Of a stretch of DNA of 64,000 bases, positions 6,112 through 29,490 are shown in pieces. The notes beneath the pieces were generated by a model, which saw nothing but the letters and a program-made list of their open reading frames with translations, did not search any database and had not been told where the DNA came from. Source of the stretch: Lytechinus pictus. Taxonomy: Eukaryota. The DNA lies in contig NC_087247.1 of assembly GCF_037042905.1 (NCBI RefSeq), forward strand, positions 77,810,001-77,874,000. Direction: 5' to 3'. The position numbers and the translations under genes are program-made. Position 1 is the stretch's first letter. Each line of letters begins with the position of its first letter.

Positions 6112-6175
6112 AATAATAATAATAACAACAACAACAAAAATAATAACAAGAATAATAATAATAATAATAATAATA
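6112..6175 (+). repeat. (AAT/AAC)n microsatellite, target site of the R4/Dong array
   Basis: Read directly; (AAT)n tracts also separate every element copy and close the array at 18366-18403. Confidence 0.95.
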
Positions 6176-9100
6176 GAGGGCGCAAATCCTTACTGAACGG
6201 ACGTGTTAAAAAGTTGCTCCCGTATTTTGCCATCATTTTACTGTTTATCTTACGATTTGTGGAAGGAAATTTACATCAGCAGATGCAATACAACACCAGG
6301 AACCCGATGGAGTACCGTGATTAGCATTTGGAGAATAATTAGGACATATATCAGTGAGTTTCATGATGTTTTTTATCGAAATTTCATAGAAAGTTGTTAT
6401 TCGAGAAGCGCGCACGATAACAAGTAGATGATACTACGCTGGCTTGATGGCAACCATTGTTACACGCTACTTTGAGTGACGTAGAACGATGAAAGGAGAT
6501 GATTACGATGGTGGAGAACTGAGATACTTTGGGAGATAAACGGCCTAGCTGAACAAACTTTTTTACACTTTAATTGTAGTTCCAGGGTAACGCCAACTCT
6601 TTTCCCCGAGCCAGGGATACGGCACAATCACTCATGCAAATGATGAATACAGATTTGAATACAAACGTTAACGGCGAAAACGAGAGAACTAGCCTGCATA
6701 GTTCGCTCGCGCCCGGTATGGATTCTGTGGAGGCTCAGGCAGGATCCAGTCGTCAATCTACTACTGGACCAAAAACTTCAACAAGAAGAGAATGGAGCAG
6801 AAGAGACAATATGAATGTCATGGAATGTTATCATGAGAGCAGACCTGACCAGGAAAGAGGCTACATCAAGAGAATGTACAAGATCTGGCAAGAGAAGGGT
6901 CTTTTCCCAACATCAGAGCAAAGACTTGCAGATCAGGTACGTGTGATCAAAAGGAATGAGTTACTGACTGAAGTTGAGAGGGAAGGGATCAGACGAAATG
7001 TGTATGAACCTGTGAGAGATGAGCAGGAGGAAGTACTCAGACCGGGAAGAGAAGAGCAGACAGAAGCAACAGCTCAATTTCAAACAGAATTGGATCCAAC
7101 CACTAACAGATTGGATGAAGAGCAGGAAGAGATAAAGATTATATTATTGGAGATAAAAGAGGGGTTAACAAAAGGAGAGCGCCCCACCCCTCCTAATCTG
7201 AAGAGAATACCAAGAGAGAAACTGCTGATAGAAACTCAGAAAGTCAACGATGTTATGAAGTTTATCAGCTCAGACAGTATTGAGGATACCAATGATCTCA
7301 TATATGCTGGAGCAGTTCTGGTAACAGAGAGGTTAGGTGTAAGAAAACAGGAGAACACAAGGAAGCACTGCCTACCACCATGGAAAAGGAGACTTGATAA
7401 TCAGATAAAGGGATGGAGGACAGACCTATCAAGACTGACAGAGATAAACCTTGGCAAAGCAGATATCAATGATTTTAAGTACCTTGGGGAGAAGTACAGT
7501 ATTAGAAGGAAATGAAGGAAGATCGTCGTGGAGGAACTAAAACAAAGAATAACAAGCACTACAGCAAAAGTAAAGAGGTACACCGATCGAGTGTCACAGT
7601 ATAGACATAATTCCTTGTTTGAGAACAACCAGAAGAGGTTCTACCAAGAAATAAATGGAAAGATGAAAGACGAAGTTCCACCACCAGATCCAGCTGAAGC
7701 AATTGCCTTCTGGAGCAACATTTGGAGCCAACCACACAATCACAACCACGAAGCTATGTGGTTGAAAACAACGAAAGAGGAATGTGCAACTATAGTTGCA
7801 CAGGATGATCTGACGATCAACAAAAGCAAGCTAGAAAAGATCATTCGGAAAATGGCGCCATGGAAAGCTGCCGGTCCAGACGGTGTGCAAGCTTTCTGGG
7901 TTAAAAGGTTCACAAATCTTCATGAAAGGCTGAGCATGCAAATGAACGAGATTGTCGTGAATGGTAACCCCCCTGATTGGATGACAAAAGGAAGAACGGT
8001 TCTCATCCCAAAGGATCCTACCAAAGGCAACATTCCGTCAAGCTACCGTCCAATTACCTGCTTGCCGATTCTCTGGAAGTTACTGACTGGCATAATATCA
8101 GAAGAAATACATCAACACCTGGACGATCAAGACATACTACCATGGGAACAGAAGGGATGTAGAAAAGGAAGTAGAGGAACAAAAGAACAACTATGCATCG
8201 ACAAAGGAATTATGAAAGACAGCAAGAAAAGAAAAACGAACCTCGCAATGGCATGGATTGACTACAAGAAAGCATACGACATGGTTCCGCACTCTTGGAT
8301 CATCGAGTCTATGGAAATGTTAGGGGTAGCAGACAATATCAGAAGGTTCCTCATTACAAGTATGACGAGATGGAGAACTAAGTTGGAAAGTAATGGTGAA
8401 GTGCTTGGAGAGGTTGGTATCAAGAGTGGAATCTTTCATGGAGATAGTCTATCTCCATTGCTGTTTGTGATGGCAATGACACTATTAACTAAGGTACTCA
8501 GAAGATCCAGGCTAGGATATGAGTTCAAGAGCAAGGCAAAAATCAACCATCTATTATACATGGACGATTTGAAGCTGTTTGGTAAGACACAAAGTGACTT
8601 GGAGTCTCTCATCAACACTTTGCGGATCTTCAGCGAAGACATCGGTATGCAGTTTGGGTTGGATAAATGTGCAATGATTACTCTCATGAAAGGTAAGCCA
8701 GCCAATGACAACAACTTCCAGATGCCGAACGGAGAAGAGATCAGATCAATCGAAGGCGGTGGTAGCTATAAATATCTCGGAATATTAAAGGCAGATCAGT
8801 TGAAACATCAAAAAATGAAGAAGAAGATTGAGGCAGAGTATATCAGGAGAATTCGGAAGGTGCTCAAATCCAAACTAAATGCTGGAAACATGGTGAAGGC
8901 TGTTAACACTTGGGCAGTAGCCCTAGTGAGATATGCTGCTGGCATAGTTGAATGGAACAAGCTTGAACTCGAAACCCTGGACAGGAAGACAAGGAAGTTG
9001 CTAACTATGCATGGGATGTTTCACCCAAAGTCTGATGTAGATAGACTTTATGTGTCAAGAGAGAAGGGAGGACGTGGTCTGGCTGGAATAGAGGAGACTG

Positions 9101-10126
9101 TAAGATATGAGGAACAAAGCCTATACTGCTATATTGAAGGCCAGATGGATAGCATCATGACGGCAGTCAAAGAGTCGATGAGGAAAGGAAAGGATGTGAC
9201 AGCGAAACAGCTGAAGGCTGATCAAAGGAAAATGAGACTGGAAGGATGGAAAGAGAAGGTGATGCACGGGCAGCATTTAAGACAGACAGAGGAGTTTGCT
9301 GGCCCAGAGAGTTGGCAGTGGCTGAAACGAGGAAGTTTAAATAAGGAGACGGAAAGTATGCTAGTTGCTGCTCAGGACCAAGCAATTAGAACAAATTACC
9401 GAATAGCCAAAGTTGAAAAGGAGCATACATCTCCCTCATGTAGAATGTGTCATGACAAAGACGAAACGGTGTCTCATCTGGTGAGTGAATGCAGCAAAAT
9501 GACACAGACAGAGTACAAAGGAAGGCACGACAGAGTAGCAGCTGCAGTTCATTGGGGTCTAGCCAAGAAGTACCATTTACCCCATGCGGAAAAATGGTAC
9601 GAACATCGGGCAGAGCCTGTAGTAGAGAACGACGATGTAAAACTTTTGTGGGATTTTAATATCCAGACAGACAAGGTCATTGAAGCTAGACGACCAGACA
9701 TCGTTCTCTTAAAGAAGAAGGAAAAGGAATGTCTCATCATAGATATTGCGATTCCGGGAGACTGCAGAGCTTGGCGTAAAGAGGAGGAAAAGATACAGAA
9801 GTATAACGATCTGGCATGGGAGCTGAGAAGGATATGGAAGGTGAAGACGAAGGTGGTACCAATAGTCATCGGAGCCTTAGGAACAGTGACAACAAGACAC
9901 AGAAGCTTTCTGGCTGTTCTAGGAGTCGAGGTGTCCTTTGAAACGATACAGAAGGCAAGCTTGCTTGGAACAGCTCATATCTTACGGAAGGTCTTGAATT
10001 AGAAAGAGAAGTGAACAATGAGAAGAGGACCCATTTGATATAATATAGAACAATAACCCTAGATTTCTGGAAGAAGTCCGGTTGCTGTTTAATATACCAA
10101 CATAACATCAAGTTGTGGACAATGGA
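6176..10126 (+). mobile_element. R4-clade (Dong/Rex6-like) RLE non-LTR retrotransposon, near full length (copy 1)
   Basis: ~460-bp 5' UTR after the (AAT)n, one long reading frame, ~125-bp 3' UTR and (TAA)n tail. RT, CCHC and PD-(D/E)xK endonuclease motifs. The 5' boundary is inferred. Confidence 0.9.
6634..10002 (+). pseudogene. R4/Dong RT-CCHC-RLE polyprotein ORF (~1122 codons) interrupted by one in-frame TGA at 7513-7515
   Basis: ORFs 6634-7515 and 7528-10002 share a frame (RRK*RKIVVEELKQ). Motifs KAAGPDG, YRPITCL, WIDYKKAYD, GIFHGDSLSP, YMDD (8557-8568), YKYLG, CRMC..ETVSHLVSEC, RHD, RPDIV, IIDIAIP, KIQKY. Confidence 0.9.
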
Positions 10127-10158
<32 letters not shown>

Positions 10159-10177
10159 TAATAATAATAATAATAAT

Positions 10178-10264
10178 AGAATATAGAACAATAACCCTAG
10201 ATTTCTGGAAGAAGTCCGGTTACTGTTTAATATACCAACAGAACATCAAGTTGTGGACAATGGA
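10178..10264 (+). mobile_element. 3'UTR-only mini-copy of the R4 element (repeated at 12696-12782 and 15218-15304)
   Basis: Matches the terminal ~88 bp of the 3' UTR (AGAATATAGAAC...TTGTGGACAATGGA), flanked by (AAT)n on both sides; has its own variant GGTTACTG. Confidence 0.9.
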
Positions 10265-10282
10265 AATAATAATAATAAAAAT

Positions 10283-12644
10283 AAAACAACGAAAGAGGAA
10301 TGTGCCACTATAGTTGCATAGGATGATCTGATGATCAACAAAAGCAAGCTAGAAAAGATCATTCGGAAAATGGCGCCATGGAAAGCTGCCGGTCCAGACG
10401 GTGTGCAAGCTTTCTGGGTTAAAAGGTTCACAAATCTTTATGAAAGGCTGAGCATGCAAATGAACGAGATTGTCGTGAATGGTAACCCCCATGATTGGAT
10501 GACAAAAGGAAGAACGGTTCTCATCCCAAAGGATCCTACCAAAGGCAACATTCCGTCAAGCTACCGTCCAATTACCTGCTTGCCGATTCTCTGGAAGTTA
10601 CTGACTGGCATAATATCAGAAGAAATACATCAACACCTGGACGATCAAGACATACTACCATGGGAACAGAAGGGATGTAGAAAAGGAAGTAGAGGAACAA
10701 AAGAACAACTATGCATCGACAAAGGAATTATGAAAGACAGCAAGAAAAGAAAAACGAACCTCGCAATGGCATGGATTGACTACAAGAAAGCATACGACAT
10801 GGTTCCGCACTCTTGGATCATCGAGTCTATGGAAATGTTAGGGGTAGCAGACAATATCAGAAGGTTCCTCATTACAAGTATGACGAGATGGAGAACTAAG
10901 TTGGAAAGTAATGGTGAAGTGCTTGGAGAGGTTGGTATCAAGAGTGGAATCTTTCATGGAGATAGTCTATCTCCATTGCTGTTTGTGATGGCAATGACAC
11001 TATTAACTAAGGTACTCAGAAGATCCAGGCTAGGATATGAGTTCAAGAGCAAGGCAAAAATCAACCATCTATTATACATGGACGATTTGAAGCTGTTTGG
11101 TAAGACACAAAGTGACTTGGAGTCTCTCATCAACACTTTGCGGATCTTCAGCGAAGACATCGGTATGCAGTTTGGGTTGGATAAATGTGCAATGATTACT
11201 CTCATGAAAGGTAAGCCAGCCAATGACAACAACTTCCAGATGCCGAACGGAGAAGAGATCAGATCAATCGAAGGCGGTGGTAGCTATAAATATCTCGGAA
11301 TATTAGAGGCAGATCAGTTGAAACATCAAAAAATGAAGAAGAAGATTGAGGCAGAGTATATCAGGAGAATTCGGAAGGTGCTCAAATCCAAACTAAATGC
11401 TGGAAACATGGTGAAGGCTGTTAACACTTGGGCAGTAGCCCTAGTGAGATATGCTGCTGGCATAGTTGAATGGAACAAGCTTGAACTCGAAACCCTGGAC
11501 AGGAAGACAAGGAAGTTGCTAACTATGCATGGGATGTTTCACCCAAAGTCTGATGTAGATAGACTTTATGTGTCAAGAGAGAAGGGAGGACGTGGTCTGG
11601 CTGGAATAGAGGAGACTGTAAGATATGAGGAACAAAGCCTATACTGCTATATTGAAGGCCAGATGGATAGCATCATGACGGCAGTCAAAGAGTCGATGAG
11701 GAAAGGAAAGGATGTGACAGCGAAACAGCTGAAGGCTGATCAAAGGAAAATGAGACTGGAAGGATGGAAAGAGAAGGTGATGCACGGGCAGCATTTAAGA
11801 CAGACAGAGGAGTTTGCTGGCCCAGAGAGTTGGCAGTGGCTGAAACGAGGAAGTTTAAATAAGGAGACGGAAAGTATGCTAGTTGCTGCTCAGGACCAAG
11901 CAATTAGAACAAATTACCGAATAGCCAAAGTTGAAAAGGAGCATACATCTCCCTCATGTAGAATGTGTCATGACAAAGACGAAACGGTGTCTCATCTGGT
12001 GAGTGAATGCAGCAAAATGACACAGACAGAGTACAAAGGAAGGCACGACAGAGTAGCAGCTGCAGTTCATTGGGGTCTAGCCAAGAAGTACCATTTACCC
12101 CATGCGGAAAAATGGTACGAACATCGGGCAGAGCCTGTAGTAGAGAACGACGATGTAAAACTTTTGTGGGATTTTAATATCCAGACAGACAAGGTCATTG
12201 AAGCTAGACGACCAGACATCGTTCTCTTAAAGAAGAAGGAAAAGGAATGTCTCATCATAGATATTGCGATTCCGGGAGACTGCAGAGCTTGGCGTAAAGA
12301 GGAGGAAAAGATACAGAAGTATAACGATCTGGCATGGGAGCTGAGAAGGATATGGAAGGTGAAGACGAAGGTGGTACCAATAGTCATCGGAGCCTTAGGA
12401 ACAGTGACAACAAGACACAGAAGCTTTCTGGCTGTTCTAGGAGTCGAGGTGTCCTTTGAAACGATACAGAAGGCAAGCTTGCTTGGAACAGCTCATATCT
12501 TACGGAAGGTCTTGAATTAGAAAGAGAAGTGAACAATGAGAAGAGGACCCATTTGATATAATATAGAACAATAACCCTAGATTTCTGGAAGAAGTCCGGT
12601 TGCTGTTTAATATACCAACATAACATCAAGTTGTGGACAATGGA
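10283..12644 (+). mobile_element. R4/Dong copy 2, 5'-truncated
   Basis: Aligns to 7765-10126 of copy 1 at an offset of 2518 bp, nearly identical. Confidence 0.95.
10331..12520 (+). CDS. Uninterrupted 729-aa RT-CCHC-RLE ORF of copy 2
   Basis: ORF track; its ATG is ACG in copy 1. All RT and endonuclease motifs present. Expression unknown. Confidence 0.7.
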   Translation: MINKSKLEKIIRKMAPWKAAGPDGVQAFWVKRFTNLYERLSMQMNEIVVNGNPHDWMTKGRTVLIPKDPTKGNIPSSYRPITCLPILWKLLTGIISEEIHQHLDDQDILPWEQKGCRKGSRGTKEQLCIDKGIMKDSKKRKTNLAMAWIDYKKAYDMVPHSWIIESMEMLGVADNIRRFLITSMTRWRTKLESNGEVLGEVGIKSGIFHGDSLSPLLFVMAMTLLTKVLRRSRLGYEFKSKAKINHLLYMDDLKLFGKTQSDLESLINTLRIFSEDIGMQFGLDKCAMITLMKGKPANDNNFQMPNGEEIRSIEGGGSYKYLGILEADQLKHQKMKKKIEAEYIRRIRKVLKSKLNAGNMVKAVNTWAVALVRYAAGIVEWNKLELETLDRKTRKLLTMHGMFHPKSDVDRLYVSREKGGRGLAGIEETVRYEEQSLYCYIEGQMDSIMTAVKESMRKGKDVTAKQLKADQRKMRLEGWKEKVMHGQHLRQTEEFAGPESWQWLKRGSLNKETESMLVAAQDQAIRTNYRIAKVEKEHTSPSCRMCHDKDETVSHLVSECSKMTQTEYKGRHDRVAAAVHWGLAKKYHLPHAEKWYEHRAEPVVENDDVKLLWDFNIQTDKVIEARRPDIVLLKKKEKECLIIDIAIPGDCRAWRKEEEKIQKYNDLAWELRRIWKVKTKVVPIVIGALGTVTTRHRSFLAVLGVEVSFETIQKASLLGTAHILRKVLN

Positions 12645-12676
<32 letters not shown>

Positions 12677-12800
12677 TAATAATAATAATAATAATAGAAT
12701 ATAGAACAATAACCCTAGATTTCTGGAAGAAGTCCGGTTACTGTTTAATATACCAACAGAACATCAAGTTGTGGACAATGGAAATAATAATAATAAAAAT

Positions 12801-15166
12801 AAAACAACGAAAGAGGAATGTGCCACTATAGTTGCATAGGATGATCTGATGATCAACAAAAGCAAGCTAGAAAAGATCATTCGGAAAATGGCGCCATGGA
12901 AAGCTGCCGGTCCAGACGGTGTGCAAGCTTTCTGGGTTAAAAGGTTCACAAATCTTTATGAAAGGCTGAGCATGCAAATGAACGAGATTGTCGTGAATGG
13001 TAACCCCCATGATTGGATGACAAAAGGAAGAACGGTTCTCATCCCAAAGGATCCTACCAAAGGCAACATTCCGTCAAGCTACCGTCCAATTACCTGCTTG
13101 CCGATTCTCTGGAAGTTACTGACTGGCATAATATCAGAAGAAATACATCAACACCTGGACGATCAAGACATACTACCATGGGAACAGAAGGGATGTAGAA
13201 AAGGAAGTAGAGGAACAAAAGAACAACTATGCATCGACAAAGGAATTATGAAAGACAGCAAGAAAAGAAAAACGAACCTCGCAATGGCATGGATTGACTA
13301 CAAGAAAGCATACGACATGGTTCCGCACTCTTGGATCATCGAGTCTATGGAAATGTTAGGGGTAGCAGACAATATCAGAAGGTTCCTCATTACAAGTATG
13401 ACGAGATGGAGAACTAAGTTGGAAAGTAATGGTGAAGTGCTTGGAGAGGTTGGTATCAAGAGTGGAATCTTTCATGGAGATAGTCTATCTCCATTGCTGT
13501 TTGTGATGGCAATGACACTATTAACTAAGGTACTCAGAAGATCCAGGCTAGGATATGAGTTCAAGAGCAAGGCAAAAATCAACCATCTATTATACATGGA
13601 CGATTTGAAGCTGTTTGGTAAGACACAAAGTGACTTGGAGTCTCTCATCAACACTTTGCGGATCTTCAGCGAAGACATCGGTATGCAGTTTGGGTTGGAT
13701 AAATGTGCAATGATTACTCTCATGAAAGGTAAGCCAGCCAATGACAACAACTTCCAGATGCCGAACGGAGAAGAGATCAGATCAATCGAAGGCGGTGGTA
13801 GCTATAAATATCTCGGAATATTAGAGGCAGATCAGTTGAAACATCAAAAAATGAAGAAGAAGATTGAGGCAGAGTATATCAGGAGAATTCGGAAGGTGCT
13901 CAAATCCAAACTAAATGCTGGAAACATGGTGAAGGCTGTTAACACTTGGGCAGTAGCCCTAGTGAGATATGCTGCTGGCATAGTTGAATGGAACAAGCTT
14001 GAACTCGAAACCCTGGACAGGAAGACAAGGAAGTTGCTAACTATGCATGGGATGTTTCACCCAAAGTCTGATGTAGATAGACTTTATGTGTCAAGAGAGA
14101 AGGGAGGACGTGGTCTGGCTGGAATAGAGGAGACTGTAAGATATGAGGAACAAAGCCTATACTGCTATATTGAAGGCCAGATGGATAGCATCATGACGGC
14201 AGTCAAAGAGTCGATGAGGAAAGGAAAGGATGTGACAGCGAAACAGCTGAAGGCTGATCAAAGGAAAATGAGACTGGAAGGATGGAAAGAGAAGGTGATG
14301 CACGGGCAGCATTTAAGACAGACAGAGGAGTTTGCTGGCCCAGAGAGTTGGCAGTGGCTGAAACGAGGAAGTTTAAATAAGGAGACGGAAAGTATGCTAG
14401 TTGCTGCTCAGGACCAAGCAATTAGAACAAATTACCGAAGAGCCAAAGTTGAAAAGGAGCATACATCTCCCTCATGTAGAATGTGTCATGACAAAGACGA
14501 AACGGTGTCTCATCTGGTGAGTGAATGCAGCAAAATGACACAGACAGAGTACAAAGTAAGGCACGACAGAGTAGCAGCTCCAGTTCATTGCATTGGGGTC
14601 TAGCCAAGAAGTACCATTTACCCCATGCGGAAAAATGGTACGAACATCGAGCAGAGCCTGTAGTAGAGAACGACGATGTAAAACTTTTATGGATTTTAAT
14701 ATCCAGACAGACAAGGTCATTGAAGCTAGACGACCAGACATCGTTCTCTTAAAGAAGAAGGAAAAGGAATGTCTCATCATAGATATTGCGATTCCGGGAG
14801 ACTGCAGAGCTTGGCGTAAAGAGGAGGAAAAGATACAGAAGTATAACGATCTGGCATGGGAGCTGAGAAGGATATGGAAGGTGAAGACGAAGGTGGTACT
14901 AATAGTCATCGGAGCCTTAGGAACAGTGACAACAAGACACAGAAGCTTTCTGGCTGTTCTAGGAGTCGAGGTGTCCTTTGAAACGATACAGAAGGCAAGC
15001 TTGCTTGGAACAGCTCATATCTTACGGAAGGTCTTGAATTAGAAAGAGAAGTGAACAATGAGAAGAGGACCCATTTGATATAATATAGAACAATAACCCT
15101 AGATTTCTGGAAGAAGTCCGGTTGCTGTTTAATATACCAACATAACATCAAGTTGTGGACAATGGA
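12801..15166 (+). mobile_element. R4/Dong copy 3, 5'-truncated, frameshifted
   Basis: Same 5' breakpoint as copy 2. A 5-bp duplication (CATTG, ~14590) and a 1-bp deletion (~14690) split the ORF into 12849-14603 and 14593-15042. Confidence 0.95.
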
Positions 15167-15198
<32 letters not shown>

Positions 15199-15322
15199 TA
15201 ATAATAATAATAATAATAGAATATAGAACAATAACCCTAGATTTCTGGAAGAAGTCCGGTTACTGTTTAATATACCAACAGAACATCAAGTTGTGGACAA
15301 TGGAAATAATAATAATAAAAAT

Positions 15323-17684
15323 AAAACAACGAAAGAGGAATGTGCCACTATAGTTGCATAGGATGATCTGATGATCAACAAAAGCAAGCTAGAAAAGATC
15401 ATTCGGAAAATGGCGCCATGGAAAGCTGCCGGTCCAGACGGTGTGCAAGCTTTCTGGGTTAAAAGGTTCACAAATCTTTATGAAAGGCTGAGCATGCAAA
15501 TGAACGAGATTGTCGTGAATGGTAACCCCCCTGATTGGATGACAAAAGGAATAACGGTTCTCATCCCAAAGGATCCTACCAAAGGCAACATTCCGTCAAG
15601 CTACCGTCCAATTACCTGCTTGCCGATTCTCTGGAAGTTACTGACTGGCATGATATCAGAAGAAATATATCAACACCTGGACGATCAAGACATACTACCA
15701 TGGGAACAGAAGGGATGTAGAAAAGGAAGTAGAGGAACAAAAGAACAACTATGCATCGACAAAGGAATTATGAAAGACAGCAAGAAAAGAAAAACGAACC
15801 TCGCAATGGCATGGATTGACTACAAGAAAGCATACGACATGGTTCCGCACTCTTGGATCATCGAGTCTATGGAAATGTTAGGGGTAGCAGACAATATCAG
15901 AAGGTTCCTCATTACAAGTATGACGAGATGGAGAACTAAGTTGGAAAGTAATGGTGAAGTGCTTGGAGAGGTTGGTATCAAGAGAGGAATCTTTCAGGGA
16001 GATAGTCTATCTCCATTGCTGTTTGTGATGGCAATGACACTATTAACTAAGGTACTCAGAAGATCCAGGCTAGGATATGAGTTCAAGAGCAAGGCAAAAA
16101 TCAACCATCTATTATACATGGACGATTTGAAGCTGTTTGGTAAGACACAAAGTGACTTGGAGTCTCTCATCAACATCTTGCGGATCTTCAGCGAAGACAT
16201 CGGTATGCAGTTTGGGTTTGATAAATGTGCAATGATTACTCTCATGAAAGGTAAGCCAGCCAATGACAACAACTTCCAGATGCCGAACGGAGAAGAGATC
16301 AGATTAATCGAAGGTGGTGGTAGCTATAAATATCTCGGAATATTAGAGGCAGATCAGTTGAAACATCAACAAATGAAGAAGAAGATTGAGGCAGAGTATA
16401 TCAGGAGAATTCGGAAGGTGCTCAAATCCAAACTAAATGCTGGAAACATGGTGAAGGCTGTTAACACTTGGCAGTATCCCTAGTGAAATATGCTGCTGGC
16501 ATAGTTGAATGGAACAAGCTTGAACTCGAAACCCTGGACAGGAAGACAAGGAAGTTGCTAACTATGCATGGGATGTTTCACCCAAAGTCTGATGTAGATA
16601 GACTTTATGTGTCAAGAGAGAAGGGAGGACGTGGTCTGGCTGGAATAGAGGAGACTGTAAGATATGAGGAACAAAGCCTATACTGCTATATTGAAGGCCA
16701 GATGGATAGCATCATGACGGCAGTCAAAGAGTCGATGAGGAAAGGAAAGGATGTGACAGCGAAACAGCTGAAGGCTGATCAAAGGAAAGTGAGACTGGAA
16801 GGATGGAAAGAGAAGGTGATGCACGGGCAGCATTTAAGACAGACAGATGAGTTTGCTGGCCCAGAGAGTTAGCAGTGGCTGAAACGAGGAAGTTTAAAGA
16901 AGGAGACGGAAAGTATGCTAGTTGCTGCTCAGGACCAAGCAATTTAGAACAAATTACCGAAGAGCCAAAGTTGAAAAGGAGCATACATCTCCCTCATGTA
17001 GAATGTGTCATGACAAAGACGAAACGGTGTCTCATCTGGTGAGTGAATGCAGCAAAATGACACAGACAGAGTACAAAGGAAGGCACGACAGAGTAGCAGC
17101 TGCAGATCATTGGGGTCTGGCCAAGAAGTACAATTTACCCCATGCGGAAAAATGGTACGAACATCGAGCAGAGCCTGTAGTAGAGAACGACGATGTAAAA
17201 CTTTTGTGGGATTTTAATATCCAGACAGACAAGGTCATTGAAGCTAGACGACCAGACATCGTTCTCTTAAAGAAGAAGGAAAAGGAATGTCTCATCATAG
17301 ATATTGCGATTCCGGGAGACTGCAGAGCTTGGCGTAAAGAGGAGGAAAAGATACAGAAGTATAACGATCTGGCATGGGAGCTGAGAAGGATATGGAAGGT
17401 GAAGACGAAGGTGGTACCAATAGTCATCGGAGCCTTAGGAACAGTGACAACAAGACACAGAAGCTTTCTGGCTGTTCTAGGAGTCGAGGTGTCCTTTGAA
17501 ACGATACAGAAGGCAAGCTTGCTTGGAACAGCTCATATCTTACGGAAGGTCTTGAATTAGAAAGAGAAGTGAACAATGAGAAGAGGACCCATTTGATAGA
17601 ATATAGAACAATAACCCTAGATTTCTGGAAGAAGTCCGGTTGCTGTAAAATATACCAACAGAACATCAAGTTGTGGACAATGGA
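15323..17684 (+). mobile_element. R4/Dong copy 4, 5'-truncated, most divergent, pseudogenised
   Basis: Same 5' breakpoint; -1 frameshift ~16471, TAG at 16870-16872, +1 frameshift ~16945; retains canonical GIFQGDSLSP. Confidence 0.95.
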
Positions 17685-17711
17685 AATAATAATAATAATA
17701 ATAATAATAAT

Positions 17712-18365
17712 AGGATGTGTGGAAAAGAGACCGAAACAATCATGCATTTGGTATCAGCATGTTCGACTCTTGCTGGAACTGAGTACATCACAAGACATGA
17801 CAATATTGCCAAACTTATCCATTGGCAACTACTGAAGGATCGCGGTAAAATGACTTGTGATCACGCTTTGGAACATCAGCCACAAACGATCACCACGATC
17901 AATAACAGCACCATATATTGGAACTGTGGCATACTAACGGATAGAACCATCAACTGCAACAAGCCGGACATCATCGTCAGAGACAACAACGTAGTAAATA
18001 TCATTGAGGTCTCTGTTCCCCATGATATCAAAATTGCTGTAAAGGAAAGAGACAAACGGCTCAAGTATTAAGACCTAAGGATTGAGATCGAGAGGATGTG
18101 GAACGTGAAAGCAGATGTCACACCAGTCATCATTGGTCACTCAGGAATGGTGAAGAAGGGAATGGAAGCCTGCATAACCAAGATCTCTCCTCACCTTCGG
18201 ATGTACGACATTCAGAAGGCAGCTATCTTGGGTACAACCAGATTGATAAGAAAGACTCTCGGACATTAGTAGTGTAAAGTTCCTAGTTGCACTTGAAATT
18301 ACTTGGTGCTTTTTGTTAGAGCAAAGTTATTCAAGAAAAAATACGGACTTGATCCTGTTTAGAGG
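17712..18365 (+). mobile_element. 5'-truncated fragment of a second RLE (R4-like) retrotransposon family
   Basis: RMCGKETETIMHLVSAC..RHD..NKPDIIV..IIEVSVP..KY*DLRIEIERMW...IQKAAILGTTRLIRKTLGH* (stop 18267-18269); unrelated 3' UTR; (AAT)n tail 18366-18403. Confidence 0.9.
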
Positions 18366-18517
18366 AATAATAATGATAATAATAATAATGATAATAATAA
18401 TAAAATAAAGGTATTCATCCAAAATTTAAGGTCGTTTAGTCCAAAATACATGTATTATTTTTATTGTGAATAAAGACAAGAAATAGTAGGGGGGACATTT
18501 GATATTGTGTCCCCCCC

Positions 18518-20048: not shown

Positions 20049-20207
20049 CATATCTCGGAGACGCATTATCAAAACGATGACATCTCTTAATTCTTCTTCA
20101 ACAGTCGATAAGCGGGACTTGTCAGTTTCCAAAGAGTTTATATCATCAAGATACCGACCTTGATCAAGCTTACGATATCGACGTTCGATGTCAAGATCAA
20201 TTGCAAT
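20049..20207 (-). CDS. EFCC1: EFCC1-like exon 6
   Basis: ttacAG|ATT...ATG|GTGAG, 159 nt, phase 0/0; IAIDLDIERR...LETDKSRLSTVEEELRDVIVLIMRLRDM resembles the EFCC1 C-terminal coiled coil. Confidence 0.85.
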
Positions 20208-20432
20208 CTGTAATGGATAGATAATTCCATATTAAGATAAATTGCAATCTGTAATCGAAAGATAATTCCATATTAAGATCAACTGCAATCTGTAACGGAA
20301 AGATAATTCCATATTAATATCAATTTCAATTTGTAATGGAAAGATAATTCAATATTAAGATCAATTGCAATCTGTAACGGAAAGATAATTCCATATGAAG
20401 ATCAATTTCAATCTGTAATCGAGAATAATTCA
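20194..20432. repeat. 41-bp minisatellite (~5.8 copies) overlapping the exon 6 acceptor
   Basis: Unit AAGATCAATTGCAATCTGTAATGGAAAGATAATTCCATATT; period 41 confirmed by CT dinucleotides at 20208, 20249, 20290, 20372, 20413. Confidence 0.95.
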
Positions 20433-21034
20433 TAATACCTATTATCATGGCCTTTCACATAAATTTTTCGGGGGGGGGGGGGAGGGAGGATAAGATGCTT
20501 GCAGATTTTCGAAGAGACTTGAGATTGTCATTGGGGCACTTTTTAAGTTTTCTAAAGTAAAATTGAAGGATTTCGCGCAGACCTTGGGTGAATTTCACGA
20601 AAATTTTCAGTAAAATTATAAGTTACCAAAATTTCGGGGAGGGGGTAATTGCCGCCCTACATACTAACTGCCAGTCTTAAAAAGGTGGTTACCTCTTACA
20701 GAAAAAGAGTGTCGTTAGTCATAAATTAATTTAAAAAAGGGTTAACTCATTAGTTTAGCGACGCGCTTCTTGGAATATAAGGATATAGCGTCCCTTCAAT
20801 GTTTTGTTGATAACTATGCTGATTTTGAACCATAGGTGGCTGCTTTATTATTAATGACCTCAAGAAGAATTATGAATAGTCACAGTCATGTTACTGGATT
20901 GTGACCCCCTTTCCGTTGTATGATACGGTACCCAGGTTTCGGAGCATGGCTAGATGCCCTTAAAGGAATATGCGTGTACGGGAGGGGGGCAGTATGACTA
21001 GCGGTCTTACCCCAATAGCTCTCCCCTAAAGCTC

Positions 21035-23223
21035 CACTTATGGAACAAACACAGTGTTGCCACAGTGTATTCACATAATTGACTATGTGTAAATTCTGTG
21101 TAAACCATGTGGTCACAGTGTTGTCACAGTGTGGAACTTCAGATCACATAGTTTACCTCATAACTACCCACATAGTTGGAATTCCAACCACAGAGTGGCA
21201 CACATATACCACAGTGTGGTATGTATTGAACTATGTGTAAAACATGTGTTCATAGTGTTGCCACAGTGTGTTCACATAGTTAACCGTTGTAATTGTGTGT
21301 AAACCATGTGGTCACAGTGTTGTCACAGAGTGGGACTTCAAATCACATAGTTAACCACATAATTATTTATATAATTATTTATATATATATATATATAATC
21401 TAAATCTTACCATTTGTGTATCTATGCCTTTGTATTGTCTTCTAATTGTTTTTTTTTTTTTTTTTTTACTTTTGATATTGTCAATAATTATTATTCTTTT
21501 TAAAGTAAGTTGGGTCGGCCTTTTTATAAGGATATTCTTTTCCTTTTTGGCTGCTTCCCTCTCAATGCTTTTTTATGTCTTTGATGTTATGTAAACTTTG
21601 TTCCTATGTATTTTACCACACTTGTGTTCATTTTTATGCAGAGAGCAAAATAAACTTGAATTGAATTGAATTGAATATATAGTTGGCATTCCAAACACAG
21701 AGTAGCACATATATACCACAGTACCGTGTGCATAAAGCAATGTGTAAATCCTATGTTCATAGTGTTGTCACAGTCTGAAAATTCATTTTATGTCGTTTTC
21801 AACATAATTTCCACTTAGTTAGTATACTGAACACAGTATGGTATATTTTTAACTATGTGTAAAGTCTCTTTGTTCATAGTATTGTCACACTATGAACACA
21901 GATGTTCAGATCATTCGTTTACCACATATCATATCCACAGACTTGGCATACTGACTACACAGTGATTCGTATGGCCACAGTGTAATGCTGGATTATGTAT
22001 AAACCTTGCATGTGTTCATAGTATTATCACACTGTGGGGGTTTCAGATCATTCATTACTTTACCACATCATTACGACATATTTACGACGTCATTTATTTA
22101 CGATGAGTAAATTTGCATTGACCTTAAGAAGTGATTATTTATTGATTAATCAACGACGAGTAGATGTTCAGTTCTATCGGAGTGACCAGATTATATAACA
22201 TTTATTTACTGAACAATCACATTCCAGAATGTTCCTCAAACGTTTTCTTTATGTATTTGTGCATGGCCCTGAGAAGCGGGGGTGCTTCCTTGGGGGATGC
22301 TGCATGTATCTTTCTCCATGGGCATCATTCCAAGGTATTCTGTAAGATGTGTAAACATGGAAAATGTAACAAAAATGACCTTTATTTTCTAGTGAAACTC
22401 TTTTTCCAATTATTTTTTGCTGTTCAAATTTACATCAGCACCCCCGGACAATAAATCGATCACAGGGCCCTGTAATTTTGGTGACTATTATTATTGTTGT
22501 TTTGGTTACATAATTATCATTATTATCATGATGTATTTTTCTAATTTGTATATGCACTATTATCAGGTCTACCATTTTTTTTTCAATTTATTTATTTGAA
22601 CAAAACTCCTTTATATCCGAGGCAATCACAAAACATGGTGCATTCATACTGATAAAAAGAAACAATACCAGAGATAAACACAGCGTTAAAAACATTAATC
22701 CCTTTACACCACAAATCTACTGTGTTTGCTAAACATGATAAATTAATACTCATTATCATCAACTTTAACATGTATTTGGCAAATCAACATCCAGGTGACT
22801 CCAAGGAGGAATCTGCAAATTCTTAGACTAGCTTGATATGCACAGAGCTAATGCGATATGCTGATGCGTGCATGCCACATAATATGTGCATTAAAACCAA
22901 AACGGTTGAGACTAAATTGGTTTAATTTCCGCAGACTCAGTACTCAATATGGTTTATTCAGTCAGACTACGAATCATGAAACACAATATAGCGCAATTTC
23001 CAATGCATCATATTATTAAAGCAATGCAATGTTGTGAGATTACTCTGTTCTGCTGACGGAGGTTCGAATCTCGCCTCAAACCACCTACTCAAGATTTTTA
23101 TTTAATTATAAATGTGTGTCACAGTGTGGTATATACACAGTGTTACCACACGTCCCAAAATCATATATTAACCACATGTGTTTGACACTGTGTTACTGTG
23201 TTGCACTGTTTTTTCCATAAGGG
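21035..23223. mobile_element. Non-autonomous DNA transposon (CMC/EnSpm-like) with CACAGTG-rich subterminal repeats
   Basis: Imperfect TIR CACTTATGGAACAAACACAGTG / CACTGTTTTTTCCATAAGGG; ~60/120-bp degenerate subrepeats at 21050-22070 and 23115-23200. Confidence 0.6.
21400..21676 (+). mobile_element. L2/CR1-type LINE 3' end
   Basis: T-rich 3' UTR, AATAAA and (TTGAA)n tail at 21650-21676, interrupting the subrepeats of the host element. Confidence 0.5.
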
Positions 23224-23350
23224 ATCTTTCAAACGTTATGTGTTGAGAATATAGACAAAATTGAATTTTAAATGGTAAGATCTGATTTTCTCCTCCAATT
23301 ATGAGAAATTTTCAATATAAACAGAATAATAAGTGAACTGGAATATTTGA

Positions 23351-25078
23351 TTTTATTAATCATCTCGATGGAATGATTTTTAACTCGATGGACATTAACG
23401 ATTAGTCATCTCTGAACCTATTTTCTGCTTGGTTTTTGTCTATAACCCGAGGGGTTTTTCGAAAGCAAACAAGTGGGTATTGTCATCTATAAAGGCTAAC
23501 AATTATCTTCCAGATGAAAACCCGACATTCTGACTCATGGTTACCTTGCGCTTAGAGGATCACAGATTGCATACAATCGAAACACTAAACAATGCTGTTT
23601 ACTTTTATCAGACGAACCTTTCACCGAAAAAATGTATCTGACACCTTACTCCGCTCTACCACTTTGTGGAAAAAATGAGGGTTGCCACTGCATTGCCTTC
23701 ATATTGCCTTATTCAACATAAATCTGCGATATGTCACTAGGGAGAATGGTCATGGCAGTTGCTTTTGAAGGGCATTTAAATTATCCATTTGAGCACTTTG
23801 GGTTTATATACTGATTGATTTTAGAGTCTTTTTACAACAGCTTGAAAACAACTATTTTGTATGGGCCGCGGAACCAGGGGGGGGGGGGACTACAGCCCTC
23901 CCCCTACTTTTTTCCAAAACCGTGTAAAAAAACGCAAAAATGACCATGCGATTGTGATTTTTTGCATGACCCCCCTCCCACTTTTGGCTCAGCCCTCCAC
24001 TTTGAAAACCAATCCGCGGCCCCTGCTATAGCAGTATCAGATGAATAATTATTCACAAAAAATACCATGATAGTAAAATACATGGCGTACTGTTCGTAAT
24101 ACTGACCTTGTGACACGTGTACAAGACTGGTGCAAGACAACCAGTGATACTATTGTCTTGGTTACTCTAATGTCCAGGTTTCATCAACTAGATCCATAAA
24201 CAGGGGCGTAGACATTTTATTAATCATCTCGATGGAATGATTTTTAACTCGATGGACATTAACGATTAGTCATCTCTGAACCTATTTTCTGCTTGGTTTT
24301 TGTCTATAACCCGAGGGGTTTTTCGAAAGCAAACAAGTGGGTATTGTCATCTATAAAGGCTAACAATTATCTTCCAGATGAAAACCCGACATTCTGACTC
24401 ATGGTTACCTTGCGCTTAGAGGATCACAGATTGCATACAATCGAAACACTAAACAATGCTGTTTACTTTTATCAGACGAACCTTTCACCGAAAAAATGTA
24501 TCTGACACCTTACTCCGCTCTACCACTTTGTGGAAAAAAATGAGGGTTGCCACTGCATTGCCTTCATATTGCCTTATTCAACATAAATCTGCGATATGTC
24601 ACTAGGGAGAATGGTCATGGCAGTTGCTTTTGAAGGGCATTTAAATTATCCATTTGAGCACTTTGGGTTTATATACTGATTGATTTTAGAGTCTTTTTAC
24701 AACAGCTTGAAAACAACTATTTTGTATGGGCCGCGGAACCAGGGGGGGGGGGACTACAGCCCTCCCCCTACTTTTTTCCAAAACCGTGTAAAAAAACGCA
24801 AAAATGACCATGCGATTGTGATTTTTTGCATGACCCCCCTCCCACTTTTGGCTCAGCCCTCCACTTTGAAAACCAATCCGCGGCCCCTGCTATAGCAGTA
24901 TCAGATGAATAATTATTCACAAAAAATACCATGATAGTAAAATACATGGCGTACTGTTCGTAATACTGACCTTGTGACACGTGTACAAGACTGGTGCAAG
25001 ACAACCAGTGATACTATTGTCTTGGTTACTCTAATGTCCAGGTTTCATCAACTAGATCCATAAACAGGGGCGTAGACA
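23351..25078. repeat. Recent 864-bp tandem duplication (23351-24214 / 24215-25078)
   Basis: Identical apart from homopolymer lengths; identical ORFs at 23904 and 24768 (offset 864). Confidence 0.95.
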
Positions 25079-26343
25079 ACGGGGGGGGGGGGGGATGAGG
25101 GGGATGCATCCCCCCCACCTCACAAGGTGGGGGGGATGGCATGTACAATCATCCCCCCCAGGTTTTGGGGAATGATATTTGGTTACTTAATAAGTCATAA
25201 TGATGATAATAATAGTAATAATAATAATGATAACAATTATAATATTAATAATAATAATAATTATGATAATGATAATAATAATCCTCATCATTATTGTAAT
25301 TGTGTTTATTGTTATTAGCCGCATTCACACGGTGAAAGCCAATTCAGACGGTAAAAAAAAAGAAAATCTTACAAGTATTTACTGGGCAGGAACGAAAAGA
25401 GGCGCAAGATATTTGGTTTCTAAGACACAAATTTGCAAGACTACAAAAGTAAAACTGACTAAGAGACCGATATGTTTGTTTGTTGAGCCATGAATGCTCC
25501 TTAAGTAAGTTTACCAACTTACCGCATGTCTCTATTATCTGATTAGCAACTGTTAATCAAGCTGTTTTTGGTATGGGAATGAAGCAACAACTTTTTTCTT
25601 TTCATCGAGACTACTTTTCAGGCACGAACCGAGTACGAGCAATACCTTCTCATATATGATATGTATTATATTTATTTATTAATTTATTAGTTTATATCAG
25701 ATTATATTACAGGTATATGATATTTATACATATATATATACATTATATGCATTTATTTATTTATTTATTTATATATTTATATACACGTTATTTTCTCAAG
25801 TCGGTTTTTATTGAAATACATGTGTGGTCTGGCCAACTCGTGTTATAGGCATTAAACATTGTGTGCAAAATGCATCAGCGCAATCTAAAACAGAATAGAA
25901 AATGAATGTGATACAACAGTATACATAATAATTCGTGACAGAGAGTACCATACTACTATCTTTATAACAAGTATTATTCAAACAAACATATATAATTATG
26001 TATAATCATGAATTGTTCAACTTCATGCTCCCACTATATGACTATTGTTACACTAATACTGATATCAGGACTGACTGGTATACATTAGTTTGTTGTTAAG
26101 CTTGCAGCAGCTACATCTTTTCTGTATTGTAAACTATTTATTTATTTTTGTTTTATTTAAGATGCACTTTGTTTTGTATTCATTTAAAGTATGTTGATTG
26201 ATACATGAAGACATAAGTTTGAAATGTTTAAAGAAGTTTGTTTCATGTAAAGCGCAGTGTGAATTTACCCTGTCTTGAAATGCGAGATAAAAGGAACCTA
26301 TTAGTATTAGCATTATTATTTGTATTAGTATTATTTTTTATTC

Positions 26344-26395
<52 letters not shown>

Positions 26396-27233
26396 CATTA
26401 TTACTATTATAAGACTGAGATCAAATAGAAGTAAATAATGCCCTAATTTGAAACGATGCAATGCCGTTATGGTTCCGATTTCTTCACAAACTTACAGAGC
26501 AGTATTGTTACTTCATGGATCATAGTGATACTGTTTATGTTTTTTGTATCTGTATGTTAATGAGCCGCCAGCCAATATCCATCTATGGATACTATGCCTG
26601 TTTCTTTGAGGTAAAAAAAAAAGCATAGTATGTACGTATTCATTATGCTTTATAATGAACAGACATATTGTTATTTGTTTGTTGTTTATGTGTTCTATTC
26701 ACAAATGGCCACAGAGGCTGTTTTCATTCATAACCACATACCCATATCAAGACAACAAAGACTATACCTGCGTGTACACAATTGACATTGGTTTTTTTTT
26801 TCTGAAGAGGTGTAACAGCAAAATTCACAGAGATAAATAAATAGGTAGTGTGGTTCAATATGCAATACTATGTGTCAGTCCATTCTGTATTCGTATGCCA
26901 CGGTGTGTAGATCTTGTCGATGTATGTCTGTCCATTCAAGGCGTAGTATGTGTGTGGTGCGAGCACCCGTGTGTGTGTGTGTGTGGGGGGTTGAGTATGT
27001 GTGTGTGTGCGTGCGCGCTTGTGTGTGTTATTTTACCTCATTAAGTATGCATCAGATTGTACGATTTCAAGTTCAAAATTGCAAAAGCTCCCTACCGTGG
27101 CAGGGGGGACACCCCCCTCCCACACCCTCCCCCCGCTCGGTCGCTTCGCTCCCTCACTCGGGCGCTTCGCGCCCTCACTAGCGTTGGCAGCCCAGTCATC
27201 CCCCCCAGGTGTACGAACCTGTCTACGCCACTG
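25065..27233. mobile_element. hAT-type non-autonomous element
   Basis: TIR CAGGGGCGTAGACA / TGTCTACGCCACTG; 8-bp TSD TCCATAAA at 25057-25064 and 27234-27241; interrupts a GACCTT-rich Tsp/HINE-like repeat. Confidence 0.8.
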
Positions 27234-27922
27234 TCCATAAACTTTCTACCCCGAAAATTATCAAAGTTCATTGACCCTTAATGACCTTTGACCTTAATGA
27301 TGTGATCTGAAACTCAGGCAAGATGTTAAGTGATACTTGGTTACTAAGTCCGCCGGGCGACTTCATAAACTGGATCCATAATTTATAATTTCAAAATCAT
27401 GACATTTCACAGATAAAGATTTCGATGTAGATTCCCCAAACATGGTCTAAGTTCATTGACCTTTAAAACTGTAAGGCCCGTATTCTAAAGTCGGGTTTAA
27501 CTTAAACTCAGGTTAAAAGTTGTGGTCTGAGTATGGATAGCCAATTGTTACATAAATTAATAACAGTAGAGATATCATATTTCGATCATTTGGCTCTCAA
27601 ATCATTCATAATTATCTAGGAAGTATAAATAGATGATCCTCTTTACCATCGATGAATCAAGAAAGAGCACAGTAAACATAAGAAACATACAACTTGATAA
27701 AAATTTTGACACTTTTGGCTTCCCATAATTTTAGCGCAGAGTTAGACCATGGTCTAAACCTGACGTCAGATTCGATCCTTTATACCTCTATGGTTGACCT
27801 TTTTTTTTTAAATGAGAACCATTTCCTCCGAACCCCTCTGAGGAAAAGCTCGTGCGGGATTTTATAATTATTATGATAGGTGAAGAAGTCAGTCAGATTT
27901 AATGAAATTGTTAAGTCTTAAC

Positions 27923-28083
27923 CTTTTGGGATTTATCTAGTGCTGCATCTCTTTCAAATTCCACCTGTCGAAGTGCTTCTTTGAGTTCTTCCATTTCAAT
28001 CTCTAGATTTACAATGTTAACACGGGTAACCGGTGAGTAGTCATCACAAGATTGAGGAAAACACCAATCGCCGGATGGTATAC
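27923..28083 (-). CDS. EFCC1: EFCC1-like exon 5
   Basis: tttcAG|GT ATA...AAG|GTTAAG; coiled coil VNLEIEMEELKEALRQVEFERDAALDK; phase 1 in, phase 0 out, consistent with neighbours. Confidence 0.75.
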
Positions 28084-29317: not shown

Positions 29318-29490
29318 TTGTTATAATGCTGTCATCATCTGATTCAGATAAAGATTCACTACTTAAGCTAGGTTGCCTTTCACTACAAGGAGTCATTCCA
29401 CCTTCATCATTCACGACTTCATTCATTCGTCCATCGTTCATGACGTCATTCAGAGAAGCATCCATATGAGGAGTGATAGTTGCATCAATC
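29318..29490 (-). CDS. EFCC1: EFCC1-like exon 4 (Ser/acidic linker)
   Basis: tttcAG|G ATT...ACA A|GTAAG; phase 2 in, phase 1 out, matching flanking exons. Confidence 0.75.

What the first reader, a model, noticed from the sequence alone, without database searches (positions are those of the whole stretch)
6112..18403. 12-kb head-to-tail array of (TAA)n-targeting R4/Dong retrotransposons in one intronic microsatellite
Seen: eight same-orientation units (1 near-full, 3 truncated, 3 mini, 1 second-family), each bounded by (AAT)n, antisense within an EFCC1-like intron. Known: Dong-type R4-clade elements use a restriction-like endonuclease to target TAA repeats and end in (TAA)n. Inference: each insertion recreates the target, so one microsatellite became a self-perpetuating landing pad that was later amplified by recombination. 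Near-identity of the copies implies a young, possibly still active family.
Basis: partly seen in the sequence, partly recalled or inferred. Interest (0 to 1): 0.75.

Follow-up and report, generated by a model that had tools for sequence, protein, structure and literature searches.

The report
Dong-type retrotransposon array in TAA microsatellite
A 12-kb stretch of sea-urchin (Lytechinus pictus) DNA is one TAA microsatellite that was hit about four times by TAA-seeking Dong-type jumping genes and then enlarged by two rounds of unequal crossing-over; it is a tidy example of an already known kind of element, not a new mechanism.

Summary
The eight same-strand units are real and each is bounded by (AAT)n, between single-copy flanks. 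Unit A (6176-10126) is a full-length 3,951-bp LINE. It has one 1,122-codon frame: Myb-like N-terminus, reverse transcriptase, CCHC knuckle and restriction-like endonuclease. A private TGA breaks the frame.

Only about four units are separate insertions: A, an 86-nt 3' stub, copy D (cut at position 1590) and a 653-bp piece of a second family. Units B and C, with their stubs, are duplicates. They share D's truncation point, an identical stub and A's interrupted tail, and they switch from D-like to A-like sequence. That is the product expected from unequal crossing-over.

Genome-wide, 24 of 28 3' ends and 28 of 37 5' junctions abut sense-strand (AAT)n, against 0.9% of background positions. Conserved RT blocks are about 60% identical to Bombyx Dong, 50% to Ascaris R4 and about 29% to HERO or R2.

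The intron location was not confirmed, because no EFCC1-like exon was found beyond the array. The unit number could not be checked with long reads. RNA reads on the element were almost absent.

The scan had already noted this stretch (s1-317741) and these families elsewhere in this genome (s1-306786, s1-294603). Verdict: ordinary, a new member of a known kind.

The parts
6112..6175 (.). Left remnant of the target microsatellite, an impure (AAT)n
   Evidence: TRF 21 copies, 90% matches. Sequence read. The flank 5739-6111 is single-copy in the genome.
6176..10126 (+). Unit A: full-length family-1 Dong-type LINE (3,951 bp), with 5' UTR 6176-6633, one frame 6634-10002 and 3' UTR 10003-10126
   Evidence: Self-BLAST. 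Translation shows one frame with a single stop. Other copies begin at the same base after (AAT)n.
7513..7515 (+). Private TGA nonsense codon that inactivates unit A
   Evidence: 15 other copies in the genome read GGA at this codon.
6769..7023 (+). N-terminal Myb/SANT-like module, the putative DNA-binding domain; there is no zinc finger upstream of the RT
   Evidence: The module is conserved in relatives. The AF2 model has pLDDT 87.5 and four helices. Most named top VIA hits are Myb/SANT/HTH-type DNA-binding domains (Sap1, NgTRF, Zeste, ISWI SANT, GT-1, Tbf1, TRF1, R2Bm, DMAP1, c-Myb) at Z 4.3-6.3, alongside unrelated chains such as ribosomal proteins. Pfam and PDB sequence searches found nothing.
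8008..8781 (+). Reverse transcriptase domain
   Evidence: Pfam RVT_1, E 4.7e-25. The best solved relatives are R2 proteins, E 5e-30. Conserved blocks match Dong and R4.
9439..9492 (+). CCHC zinc knuckle (C-R-x-C ... H ... C)
   Evidence: Translation. The residues are invariant in 47 relatives. The arginine between the first two Cys is reported as conserved in many RLE LINE clades, with R2, Dong, NeSL and Utopia named as examples (PMC5678591).
9694..9792 (+). Restriction-like endonuclease core (PD ... D ... E..K)
   Evidence: Translation. P723, D724, D745, E752 and K755 are invariant in the alignment.
10127..10178 (+). Tail of A: (AAT)9 GAT (AAT)7
   Evidence: The same interrupted tail follows B and C.
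10179..10282 (+). Stub 1: the last 86 nt of a family-1 element plus an 18-nt degenerate AAT spacer
   Evidence: It differs from A's 3' end at 2 sites, so it came from another source copy.
10283..12696 (+). Unit B (starts at element position 1590) with an A-type tail; a recombinant
   Evidence: Variant table: D-like at columns 24-157, A-like from column 230 on.
12697..12800 (+). Stub 2, identical to stub 1
12801..15218 (+). Unit C with an A-type tail; a copy of B with 6 private changes, including a 5-bp insertion at 14586-14590
15219..15322 (+). Stub 3, identical to stubs 1 and 2
15323..17712 (+). Unit D: an independently inserted copy truncated at position 1590, with a pure (AAT)9 tail
   Evidence: About 1.4% divergent from A, with roughly 27 private substitutions.
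17713..18365 (+). Family-2 fragment: the last 653 bp of a 7,763-bp Dong-type element (CCHC and endonuclease end), with one in-frame stop
   Evidence: Translation. At least 41 copies at 99% identity in the genome. Full-length copy characterised. Its RT-RLE region is 37% identical to family 1.
18366..18408 (.). Right remnant of the target microsatellite
   Evidence: The flank 18409-18525 is single-copy.
20049..40234 (-). Context: EFCC1/CCDC48-like gene, with exon matches at 39989-40234, 38492-38668 and (weak) 20049-20144
   Evidence: Pfam PF15799. No match was found on the far side of the array.

Best explanation
This is a single (TAA)n microsatellite in Lytechinus pictus that two young families of Dong-type (R4-clade) LINEs used repeatedly as an insertion site. 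Inferred from the family, not shown here: the element's protein recognises TAA repeats, its restriction-like endonuclease nicks them, and the reverse transcriptase primes on the nick and copies the RNA from its (UAA)n 3' end. Every insertion therefore leaves TAA repeats on both sides and the site stays targetable. Shown by sequence: about four insertions happened here. They are a full-length copy A, an 86-nt stub, a copy D truncated at position 1590, and a 653-bp family-2 fragment. An unequal crossover between D and the homologous 3' part of A then created B, which is D-like at its 5' end, A-like afterwards, and carries A's tail and another stub. A second misaligned exchange created C. The result is three 2,518/2,522-bp higher-order repeats. 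All copies in this array are dead or truncated.
For: Anatomy and period. Domains: RVT_1, CCHC and PD..D..E..K in one 1,122-codon frame. Target specificity: 24 of 28 3' ends and 28 of 37 5' junctions of genomic copies abut sense-strand (AAT)n, against 0.86% of background positions. Among 52 evaluable relatives at 35-61% identity, 25 carry sense (AAT)n 60-190 nt after the ORF, and several carry it at both ends. Clade: a hand count over four ungapped RT blocks (109 positions) against a published alignment gives Dong 65, Ascaris R4 54, HERO-2_DR 30 and R2Bm 33 identical positions. The Dong-type linker motif is also shared. Myb-like N-terminal fold without a zinc finger, as reported for R4/Dong in PMC7998251. 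Recombination: B and C share D's exact truncation point, identical stubs, the identical interrupted tail of A, and a D-to-A switch between 10439 and 10512. Other loci show both processes separately: three different truncations in one tract on C11, and three identical plus one different on C16. Literature: Dong, DongAg and DongBg target TAA (PMC3812793).
Against: No long reads were served, so the number of 2,518-bp units is not independently verified. No phylogenetic tree was built; clade assignment rests on a hand comparison of conserved blocks and on architecture. The HDV-like 5' ribozyme shown experimentally for Bombyx Dong and for R4 (PMC3774820) was not detected by Rfam or by my own descriptor. 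DNA binding and cleavage at TAA are inferred, not shown. C carries D-type bases at two sites inside its A-like part (columns 1641 and 1851), which needs an extra gene-conversion step or shared polymorphism.
Confidence: 0.85

Rival explanations
1. Assembly artefact: the three 2,518-bp repeats, or some of them, are an expansion made by the assembler. For example, two haplotypes of a highly heterozygous urchin could have been laid in tandem. The real locus would then be A-stub-D, or A-stub-B-stub-D.
For: B and C are 99.6% alike and the period is exact. No run with long raw reads was available, and Logan contigs collapse repeats.
Against: C has six private changes, including a 5-bp insertion and a 1-bp deletion, and B is a clean D/A chimera. 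Neither is expected from a simple duplication error, although haplotype stacking could mimic them. Arrays with the same architecture occur at other loci.
Confidence: 0.1
2. All eight units are independent retrotranspositions, with no recombination.
For: Independent multiple insertions into one TAA tract do occur, as in the C11 tract with truncations at family-2 positions 6739, 7310 and 6981.
Against: Three copies share the same truncation base, identical 104-bp stub-plus-spacer sequences, the same GAT interruption in a 52-bp tail, and the chimeric D/A variant pattern. Independent events would not reproduce all of these.
Confidence: 0.02
3. The elements belong to another restriction-like-endonuclease clade that acquired TAA specificity convergently. 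The obvious candidate is HERO, which is known from sea urchins and has some microsatellite-specific families.
For: HERO occurs in sea urchin (PMC9004415) and some HERO families target microsatellites (PMC4640811). No tree was built, and no HDV-like ribozyme was found.
Against: The conserved RT blocks and the linker match Dong and R4 (60% and 50%) far better than HERO or R2 (about 28-30%). The Myb-like N-terminus, the TAA target and the tail match the published description of R4/Dong.
Confidence: 0.04
4. The stub and copy D are one insertion event. The reverse transcriptase reached the broken 5' end of its RNA at position 1590 and jumped to the 3' end of a second transcript, copying a short tail and 86 nt before the cDNA was joined to the target.
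For: The spacer between stub and D is only 18 nt of degenerate AAT. Another locus, L025, also has a 113-nt stub next to a longer copy. End-to-end template jumping is known for the related R2 enzyme (my own knowledge, not tested here).
Against: The stub differs from D's own 3' end at several sites, so two RNAs would be needed. In L025 the stub lies on the other side of the longer copy. Two ordinary insertions explain the same facts.
Confidence: 0.15

Closest known systems
Dong (Bombyx mori), with DongAg (Anopheles gambiae), DongBg (Biomphalaria glabrata) and the Dong-like elements of ostracods, cnidarians and molluscs
   Same: Single ORF with RT, CCHC knuckle and C-terminal restriction-like endonuclease. 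(TAA)n is both target and 3' tail. N-terminal Myb-like domain without zinc fingers. About 60% identity in the conserved RT blocks, and the same linker motif.
   Different: The host is an echinoderm; the papers I could search describe no sea-urchin Dong family. No HDV-like 5' ribozyme was detectable. The companion family 2 carries five N-terminal modules instead of one.
R4 (Ascaris lumbricoides and other nematodes)
   Same: Same clade signature blocks (about 50% identity in them) and the same domain order.
   Different: R4 inserts at a specific site in 28S rDNA, not in TAA repeats.
R2 (28S rDNA-specific; structures solved for R2Bm and bird R2)
   Same: Best solved relatives (E 5e-30 over the RT). 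Restriction-like endonuclease, target-primed reverse transcription and a Myb-type DNA-binding module. Tandem target arrays let copies accumulate and recombine.
   Different: R2 has N-terminal zinc fingers and a 28S target. Identity in the RT blocks is only about 30%.
HERO clade (sea urchin, lancelet, fish, leech)
   Same: A restriction-like-endonuclease LINE present in sea urchins; a few families are microsatellite-specific.
   Different: The RT blocks and the linker are clearly different, at 28% identity. Most HERO families are not target-specific.
Kibi, Koshi, Mino and Waldo (AP-endonuclease LINEs that target TC, TTC, AC or ACAY repeats)
   Same: The same lifestyle: insertion into a microsatellite that the element's own tail regenerates (PMC3812793).
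   Different: They use a different endonuclease type and belong to different clades.

Membership tests
R4/Dong clade LINE | Single ORF with central RT, CCHC knuckle and C-terminal PD-(D/E)XK restriction-like endonuclease, and no AP endonuclease | tested here: met
   The family frame is 1,122 codons. The stop in unit A is private.
R4/Dong clade LINE | RT sequence groups with named R4/Dong references rather than with R2, HERO or CRE | tested here: met
   Hand count on four ungapped blocks (109 positions) of the alignment in PMC5678591, Additional file 7: Dong 65, R4 54, HERO-2_DR 30, R2Bm 33. The linker motif is shared with Dong, DongAa and DongAG. No tree was built, because the reference letters could not be passed to a program. 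NeSL/Utopia rows of the alignment were not read.
R4/Dong clade LINE | N-terminal diverged Myb/SANT-like domain and no N-terminal zinc finger (PMC7998251) | tested here: met
   There is no Cys/His motif before the RT. The conserved 80-aa module folds with pLDDT 87.5. Most named top structural hits are Myb/SANT-type domains, including DMAP1 and R2Bm, but only at Z 4.3-6.3 and alongside unrelated chains. Sequence profiles gave nothing, so the support is moderate.
Dong lineage | Insertion into (TAA)n, with the repeat on both sides in one orientation | tested here: met
   24 of 28 3' ends and 28 of 37 5' junctions, against 0.86% background. Relatives in other organisms show the same.
Dong lineage | 3' end is a (TAA)n tail rather than poly(A) | tested here: met
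R4/Dong clade LINE | HDV-like self-cleaving ribozyme at the 5' junction (shown for Bombyx Dong and Ascaris R4, PMC3774820) | tested here: inconclusive
   No Rfam match, even at E up to 10, and no hit with my own strict double-pseudoknot descriptor. Such ribozymes are poorly conserved in sequence, so absence is not shown.
HERO clade LINE | RT and linker sequence of HERO type | tested here: not met
   30 of 109 identical positions in the RT blocks, and a different linker.
R2 clade LINE | Insertion in 28S rDNA and N-terminal CCHH zinc finger(s) | tested here: not met
   The flanks are TAA repeats. There is no zinc finger. Only the RT region aligns to R2 structures.

The most novel reading that the evidence does not exclude
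In this genome the pairing of TAA tracts with Dong copies works as a recurrent generator of kilobase-period tandem repeats. Insertions supply long homologous blocks in one orientation, closely spaced, and unequal exchange then multiplies them. The periods seen are 2,518 bp here, 1,983 bp on C16, and 3,323 bp for an internal family-2 segment on C12. Such arrays would be copy-number polymorphic and could be an early stage of LINE-derived satellite DNA.
Probability: 0.3. Interest if true: 0.4.

Novelty: new member of a known kind. Interest (0 to 1): 0.25.

Why it matters
It gives a clean, dated case of how a target-specific LINE and its microsatellite feed each other. It also separates the two processes that build such arrays, re-insertion and unequal crossing-over, using diagnostic variants. 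For annotation, it shows that the many 'uncharacterized protein' gene models of L. pictus that match this ORF are Dong-type transposon fragments. It does not change what is known about the mechanism.

Tried and rejected
- Eight independent insertions: rejected by the shared truncation point, stub, tail and chimeric variant pattern.
- The in-frame stop in A as a programmed read-through or a two-ORF design: rejected, because 15 other copies read GGA there.
- HDV-like ribozyme: not found by Rfam at the gathering or E-value thresholds, or by my own descriptor.
- Myb domain by sequence: Pfam and PDB profile searches were blank. The whole 293-aa N-terminal model gave no Foldseek match, and Foldseek on the module alone was not significant. 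Only VIA-align on the module gave a list in which Myb/SANT-type domains predominate.
- Naming the clade from database names: the word search gave 1,712 relatives, but only L. pictus 'uncharacterized' names. The ESM Atlas gave only 'hypothetical protein' clusters.
I used one metagenome scan instead.
- Expression and array validation by reads: two RNA runs, about 6% read, gave depth of at most 0.8 over the body and about 2.5 over the 3' UTR, from variant copies. DNA runs exist only as collapsed contigs. This says nothing on unit number and is no proof that the family is silent.
- Three older papers (PMC309301, PMC307436, PMC4400214) were not held.
- The big representative search and complex prediction were not used, because the question did not need them.
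Full report
**What is there.** The window is Lytechinus pictus, G000:C3:77810001-77874000, and contains no N. Tandem Repeats Finder places (AAT)n tracts at 6112-6175, 10127-10178, 12645-12696, 15167-15218, 17685-17712 and 18366-18408. Self-comparison gives the following units, all on the + strand:
- A, 6176-10126 (3,951 bp).
- A stub of the last 86 nt of the element (10179-10264), followed by 18 nt of degenerate AAT.
- B, 10283-12644, which starts at element position 1590.
- The same stub-plus-copy unit twice more: stub 12697-12782 with C 12801-15166, and stub 15219-15304 with D 15323-17684.
- A 653-bp fragment of a second family, 17713-18365.

The start-to-start period is 2,518 or 2,522 bp. 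The immediate flanks 5739-6111 and 18409-18525 match only themselves in the 812-Mb genome. The whole array therefore sits in one microsatellite between unique DNA.

**The element.** From 6634 to 10002 there is one reading frame of 1,122 codons with a single stop. Pfam finds RVT_1 (E 4.7e-25) and a weak zf-RVT match. Downstream of the RT lie a C-R-x-C...H...C knuckle and a PD...D...E..K motif. These residues are invariant across 47 relatives. There is no AP endonuclease. The stop is a TGA at 7513-7515 and is private to unit A, since 15 other copies read GGA there. Other copies begin at the same base as A, directly after (AAT)n. A is therefore full length but dead.

**Target specificity.** The genome holds at least 48 matches at 93-99% identity, most of them 5'-truncated and ending at the same 3' base. 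Of 28 3' ends, 24 are followed directly by three or more sense AAT units. Of 37 5' breakpoints, 28 have such units within 20 nt; that count includes internal breakpoints, so it is an underestimate. Only 0.86% of background positions qualify.

Family 2's 3' end often lies directly upstream of family-1 copies in the same tract. A metagenome scan returned 80 relatives at 32-61% protein identity (35-61% among the 52 evaluable). Of the 52 with enough 3' sequence, 25 carry sense (AAT)n 60-190 nt after the ORF, and several carry it at both contig ends. A minority end in poly(A), (ATT)n or (TA)n.

**Clade.** The best solved relatives are R2 proteins, over the RT region only (E 5e-30). HERO elements occur in sea urchins and can be microsatellite-specific, so HERO had to be excluded. 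Database names did not help.

A published alignment (PMC5678591, Additional file 7) holds Bombyx Dong, DongAa, DongAG, Ascaris R4, several R2, CRE and HERO sequences. I could not pass those letters to a program, so I counted by hand over four ungapped conserved blocks totalling 109 positions. Family 1 shares 65 positions with Dong, 54 with R4, 30 with HERO-2_DR and 33 with R2Bm. The linker before the knuckle also carries the Dong-type motif. This is a comparison of conserved blocks, not a tree.

**N-terminal module.** PMC7998251 reports that R4/Dong proteins have a diverged Myb/SANT-like N-terminal domain and no zinc finger, and that Dong targets (TAA)n in most insects, molluscs and cnidarians. 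Here an 80-residue module (6769-7023) is conserved in relatives. Sequence profiles do not name it. Its AlphaFold model is confident (pLDDT 87.5, four helices).

An exhaustive structural comparison puts mainly Myb/SANT-type DNA-binding domains at the top. These include Sap1, NgTRF, Zeste, ISWI SANT, GT-1, Tbf1, TRF1, the R2Bm protein, DMAP1 and c-Myb. The Z-scores are only 4.3-6.3, and some unrelated chains, such as ribosomal proteins, rank among them. I take this as moderate support.

**How the array grew.** The alignment of the four homologous blocks shows:
- B and C equal D at columns 24, 37, 50 and 157.
- From column 230 onwards B and C equal A, at about 25 sites where D differs.
- B and C share one derived base at column 209.
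- All three stubs are identical.
- B and C start at exactly D's truncation point.
- Both are followed by A's tail, with its GAT interruption, whereas D has a pure (AAT)9 tail.

This is the product expected if D on one chromatid paired with the 3' part of A on the other and they crossed over between 10439 and 10512 (B coordinates). A second misaligned exchange then added C. C has six private changes, plus two D-type bases that suggest a small conversion.

There were therefore about four insertions (A, stub, D and the family-2 fragment) and two duplications.

**Both processes recur elsewhere.**
- A tract on C11 holds three family-2 copies with different truncation points. That is repeated insertion.
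- A tract on C16 holds three copies truncated at 5810 and one at 5900. That is insertion followed by duplication.
- On C12 an internal 3.3-kb family-2 segment is repeated three times head to tail, with no TAA between the copies.

**Activity.** Copies are young, and 2 of the 30 best-matching loci keep the whole 1,122-codon frame. Two rRNA-depleted RNA runs, with about 6% of each read, gave depth of at most 0.8 on the element body. Depth was about 2.5 on the 3' UTR, from reads carrying variants of other copies. That is neither evidence for activity nor proof of silence. Contigs of a DNA run show word depth rising from the 5' end to the 3' end, as expected for a 5'-truncating LINE family.

**Host gene.** Pfam CCD48, the family of EFCC1/CCDC48, matches minus-strand ORFs at 39989-40234 and 38492-38668. 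It matches weakly at 20049-20144 (profile positions 479-510 of 578). That last ORF runs 35 more codons to a stop. No match lies below 18.4 kb. The array is antisense to the gene, but whether it is intronic is not shown.

**Not found or not possible.**
- No HDV-like ribozyme.
- No long reads.

**Verdict.** The thing itself is an ordinary new member of the Dong lineage behaving as known theory predicts.

Noticed in passing
L047:7383-9001 joined to L043:1-6645 (G000:C14:5129382-5137144): A full-length family-2 element is 7,763 bp, flanked by (AAT)n, with one ORF of about 2,425 aa. Its N-terminal 1,150 residues hold five tandem copies of the Myb-like module that family 1 has once; copies 2-5 are nearly identical. 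Relatives mostly have one copy, and one metagenome element (L073) has two. This matches the earlier scan finding s1-306786.
   Followed up: partly
L049, L050, L053, L055, L061, L062: first ~80 nt after the head (AAT)n: Related elements from other organisms share a conserved 5'-terminal motif directly at the TAA junction. It has a variable hairpin and two helices that would cross, so a pseudoknot is possible. There is no Rfam match. The two L. pictus families lack it, but share a different conserved 40-nt stretch with each other. It might be this lineage's processing ribozyme.
   Followed up: partly
L135 (G000:C12:29729600-29739599): Three head-to-tail copies of an internal family-2 segment (element positions 2179-5505, period 3,323 bp), with no TAA repeat between them. 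This is a tandem duplication inside an element, not repeated insertion.
   Followed up: partly
L136 (G000:C11:28532500-28537500) and L046 (G000:C16:24796000-24805999): Two further multi-copy TAA tracts. One holds three family-2 copies of 1,025, 454 and 783 bp. The other holds three copies of 1,954 bp plus one of 1,864 bp.
   Followed up: yes
L027 (G000:C9:22518531-22522937): One family-1 copy sits at the edge of a TAA tract and is flanked by a 13-bp direct repeat of non-TAA sequence, with only a very short tail. It looks like a target-site duplication and hints at the spacing of the two strand cuts.
   Followed up: no
window 49831-50667 (-): An uninterrupted 279-aa ORF with a complete trypsin domain (Pfam Trypsin, E 2e-57), upstream of the EFCC1-like gene on the same strand.
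   Followed up: no
window 20193-20431: A 41-bp tandem repeat (5.9 copies, 87% matches) that abuts the ORF carrying the weak last EFCC1-like match.
   Followed up: no
window 25188-25282, 26314-26410, 54484-54711: Other TAA/ATT microsatellites in the same window with no Dong copy in them, so they are unoccupied potential targets. A separate retroelement fragment with a zf-RVT match lies at 30315-30788 (+).
   Followed up: no
window 5600-5738 and 18526 onward: Both unique flanks are soon followed by other high-copy repeats: a 75-nt inverted-repeat element on the left, and a family at about 93% identity with 40 or more copies on the right. The 30-nt hairpin at 6026-6055 is also highly repeated in read data.
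   Followed up: partly
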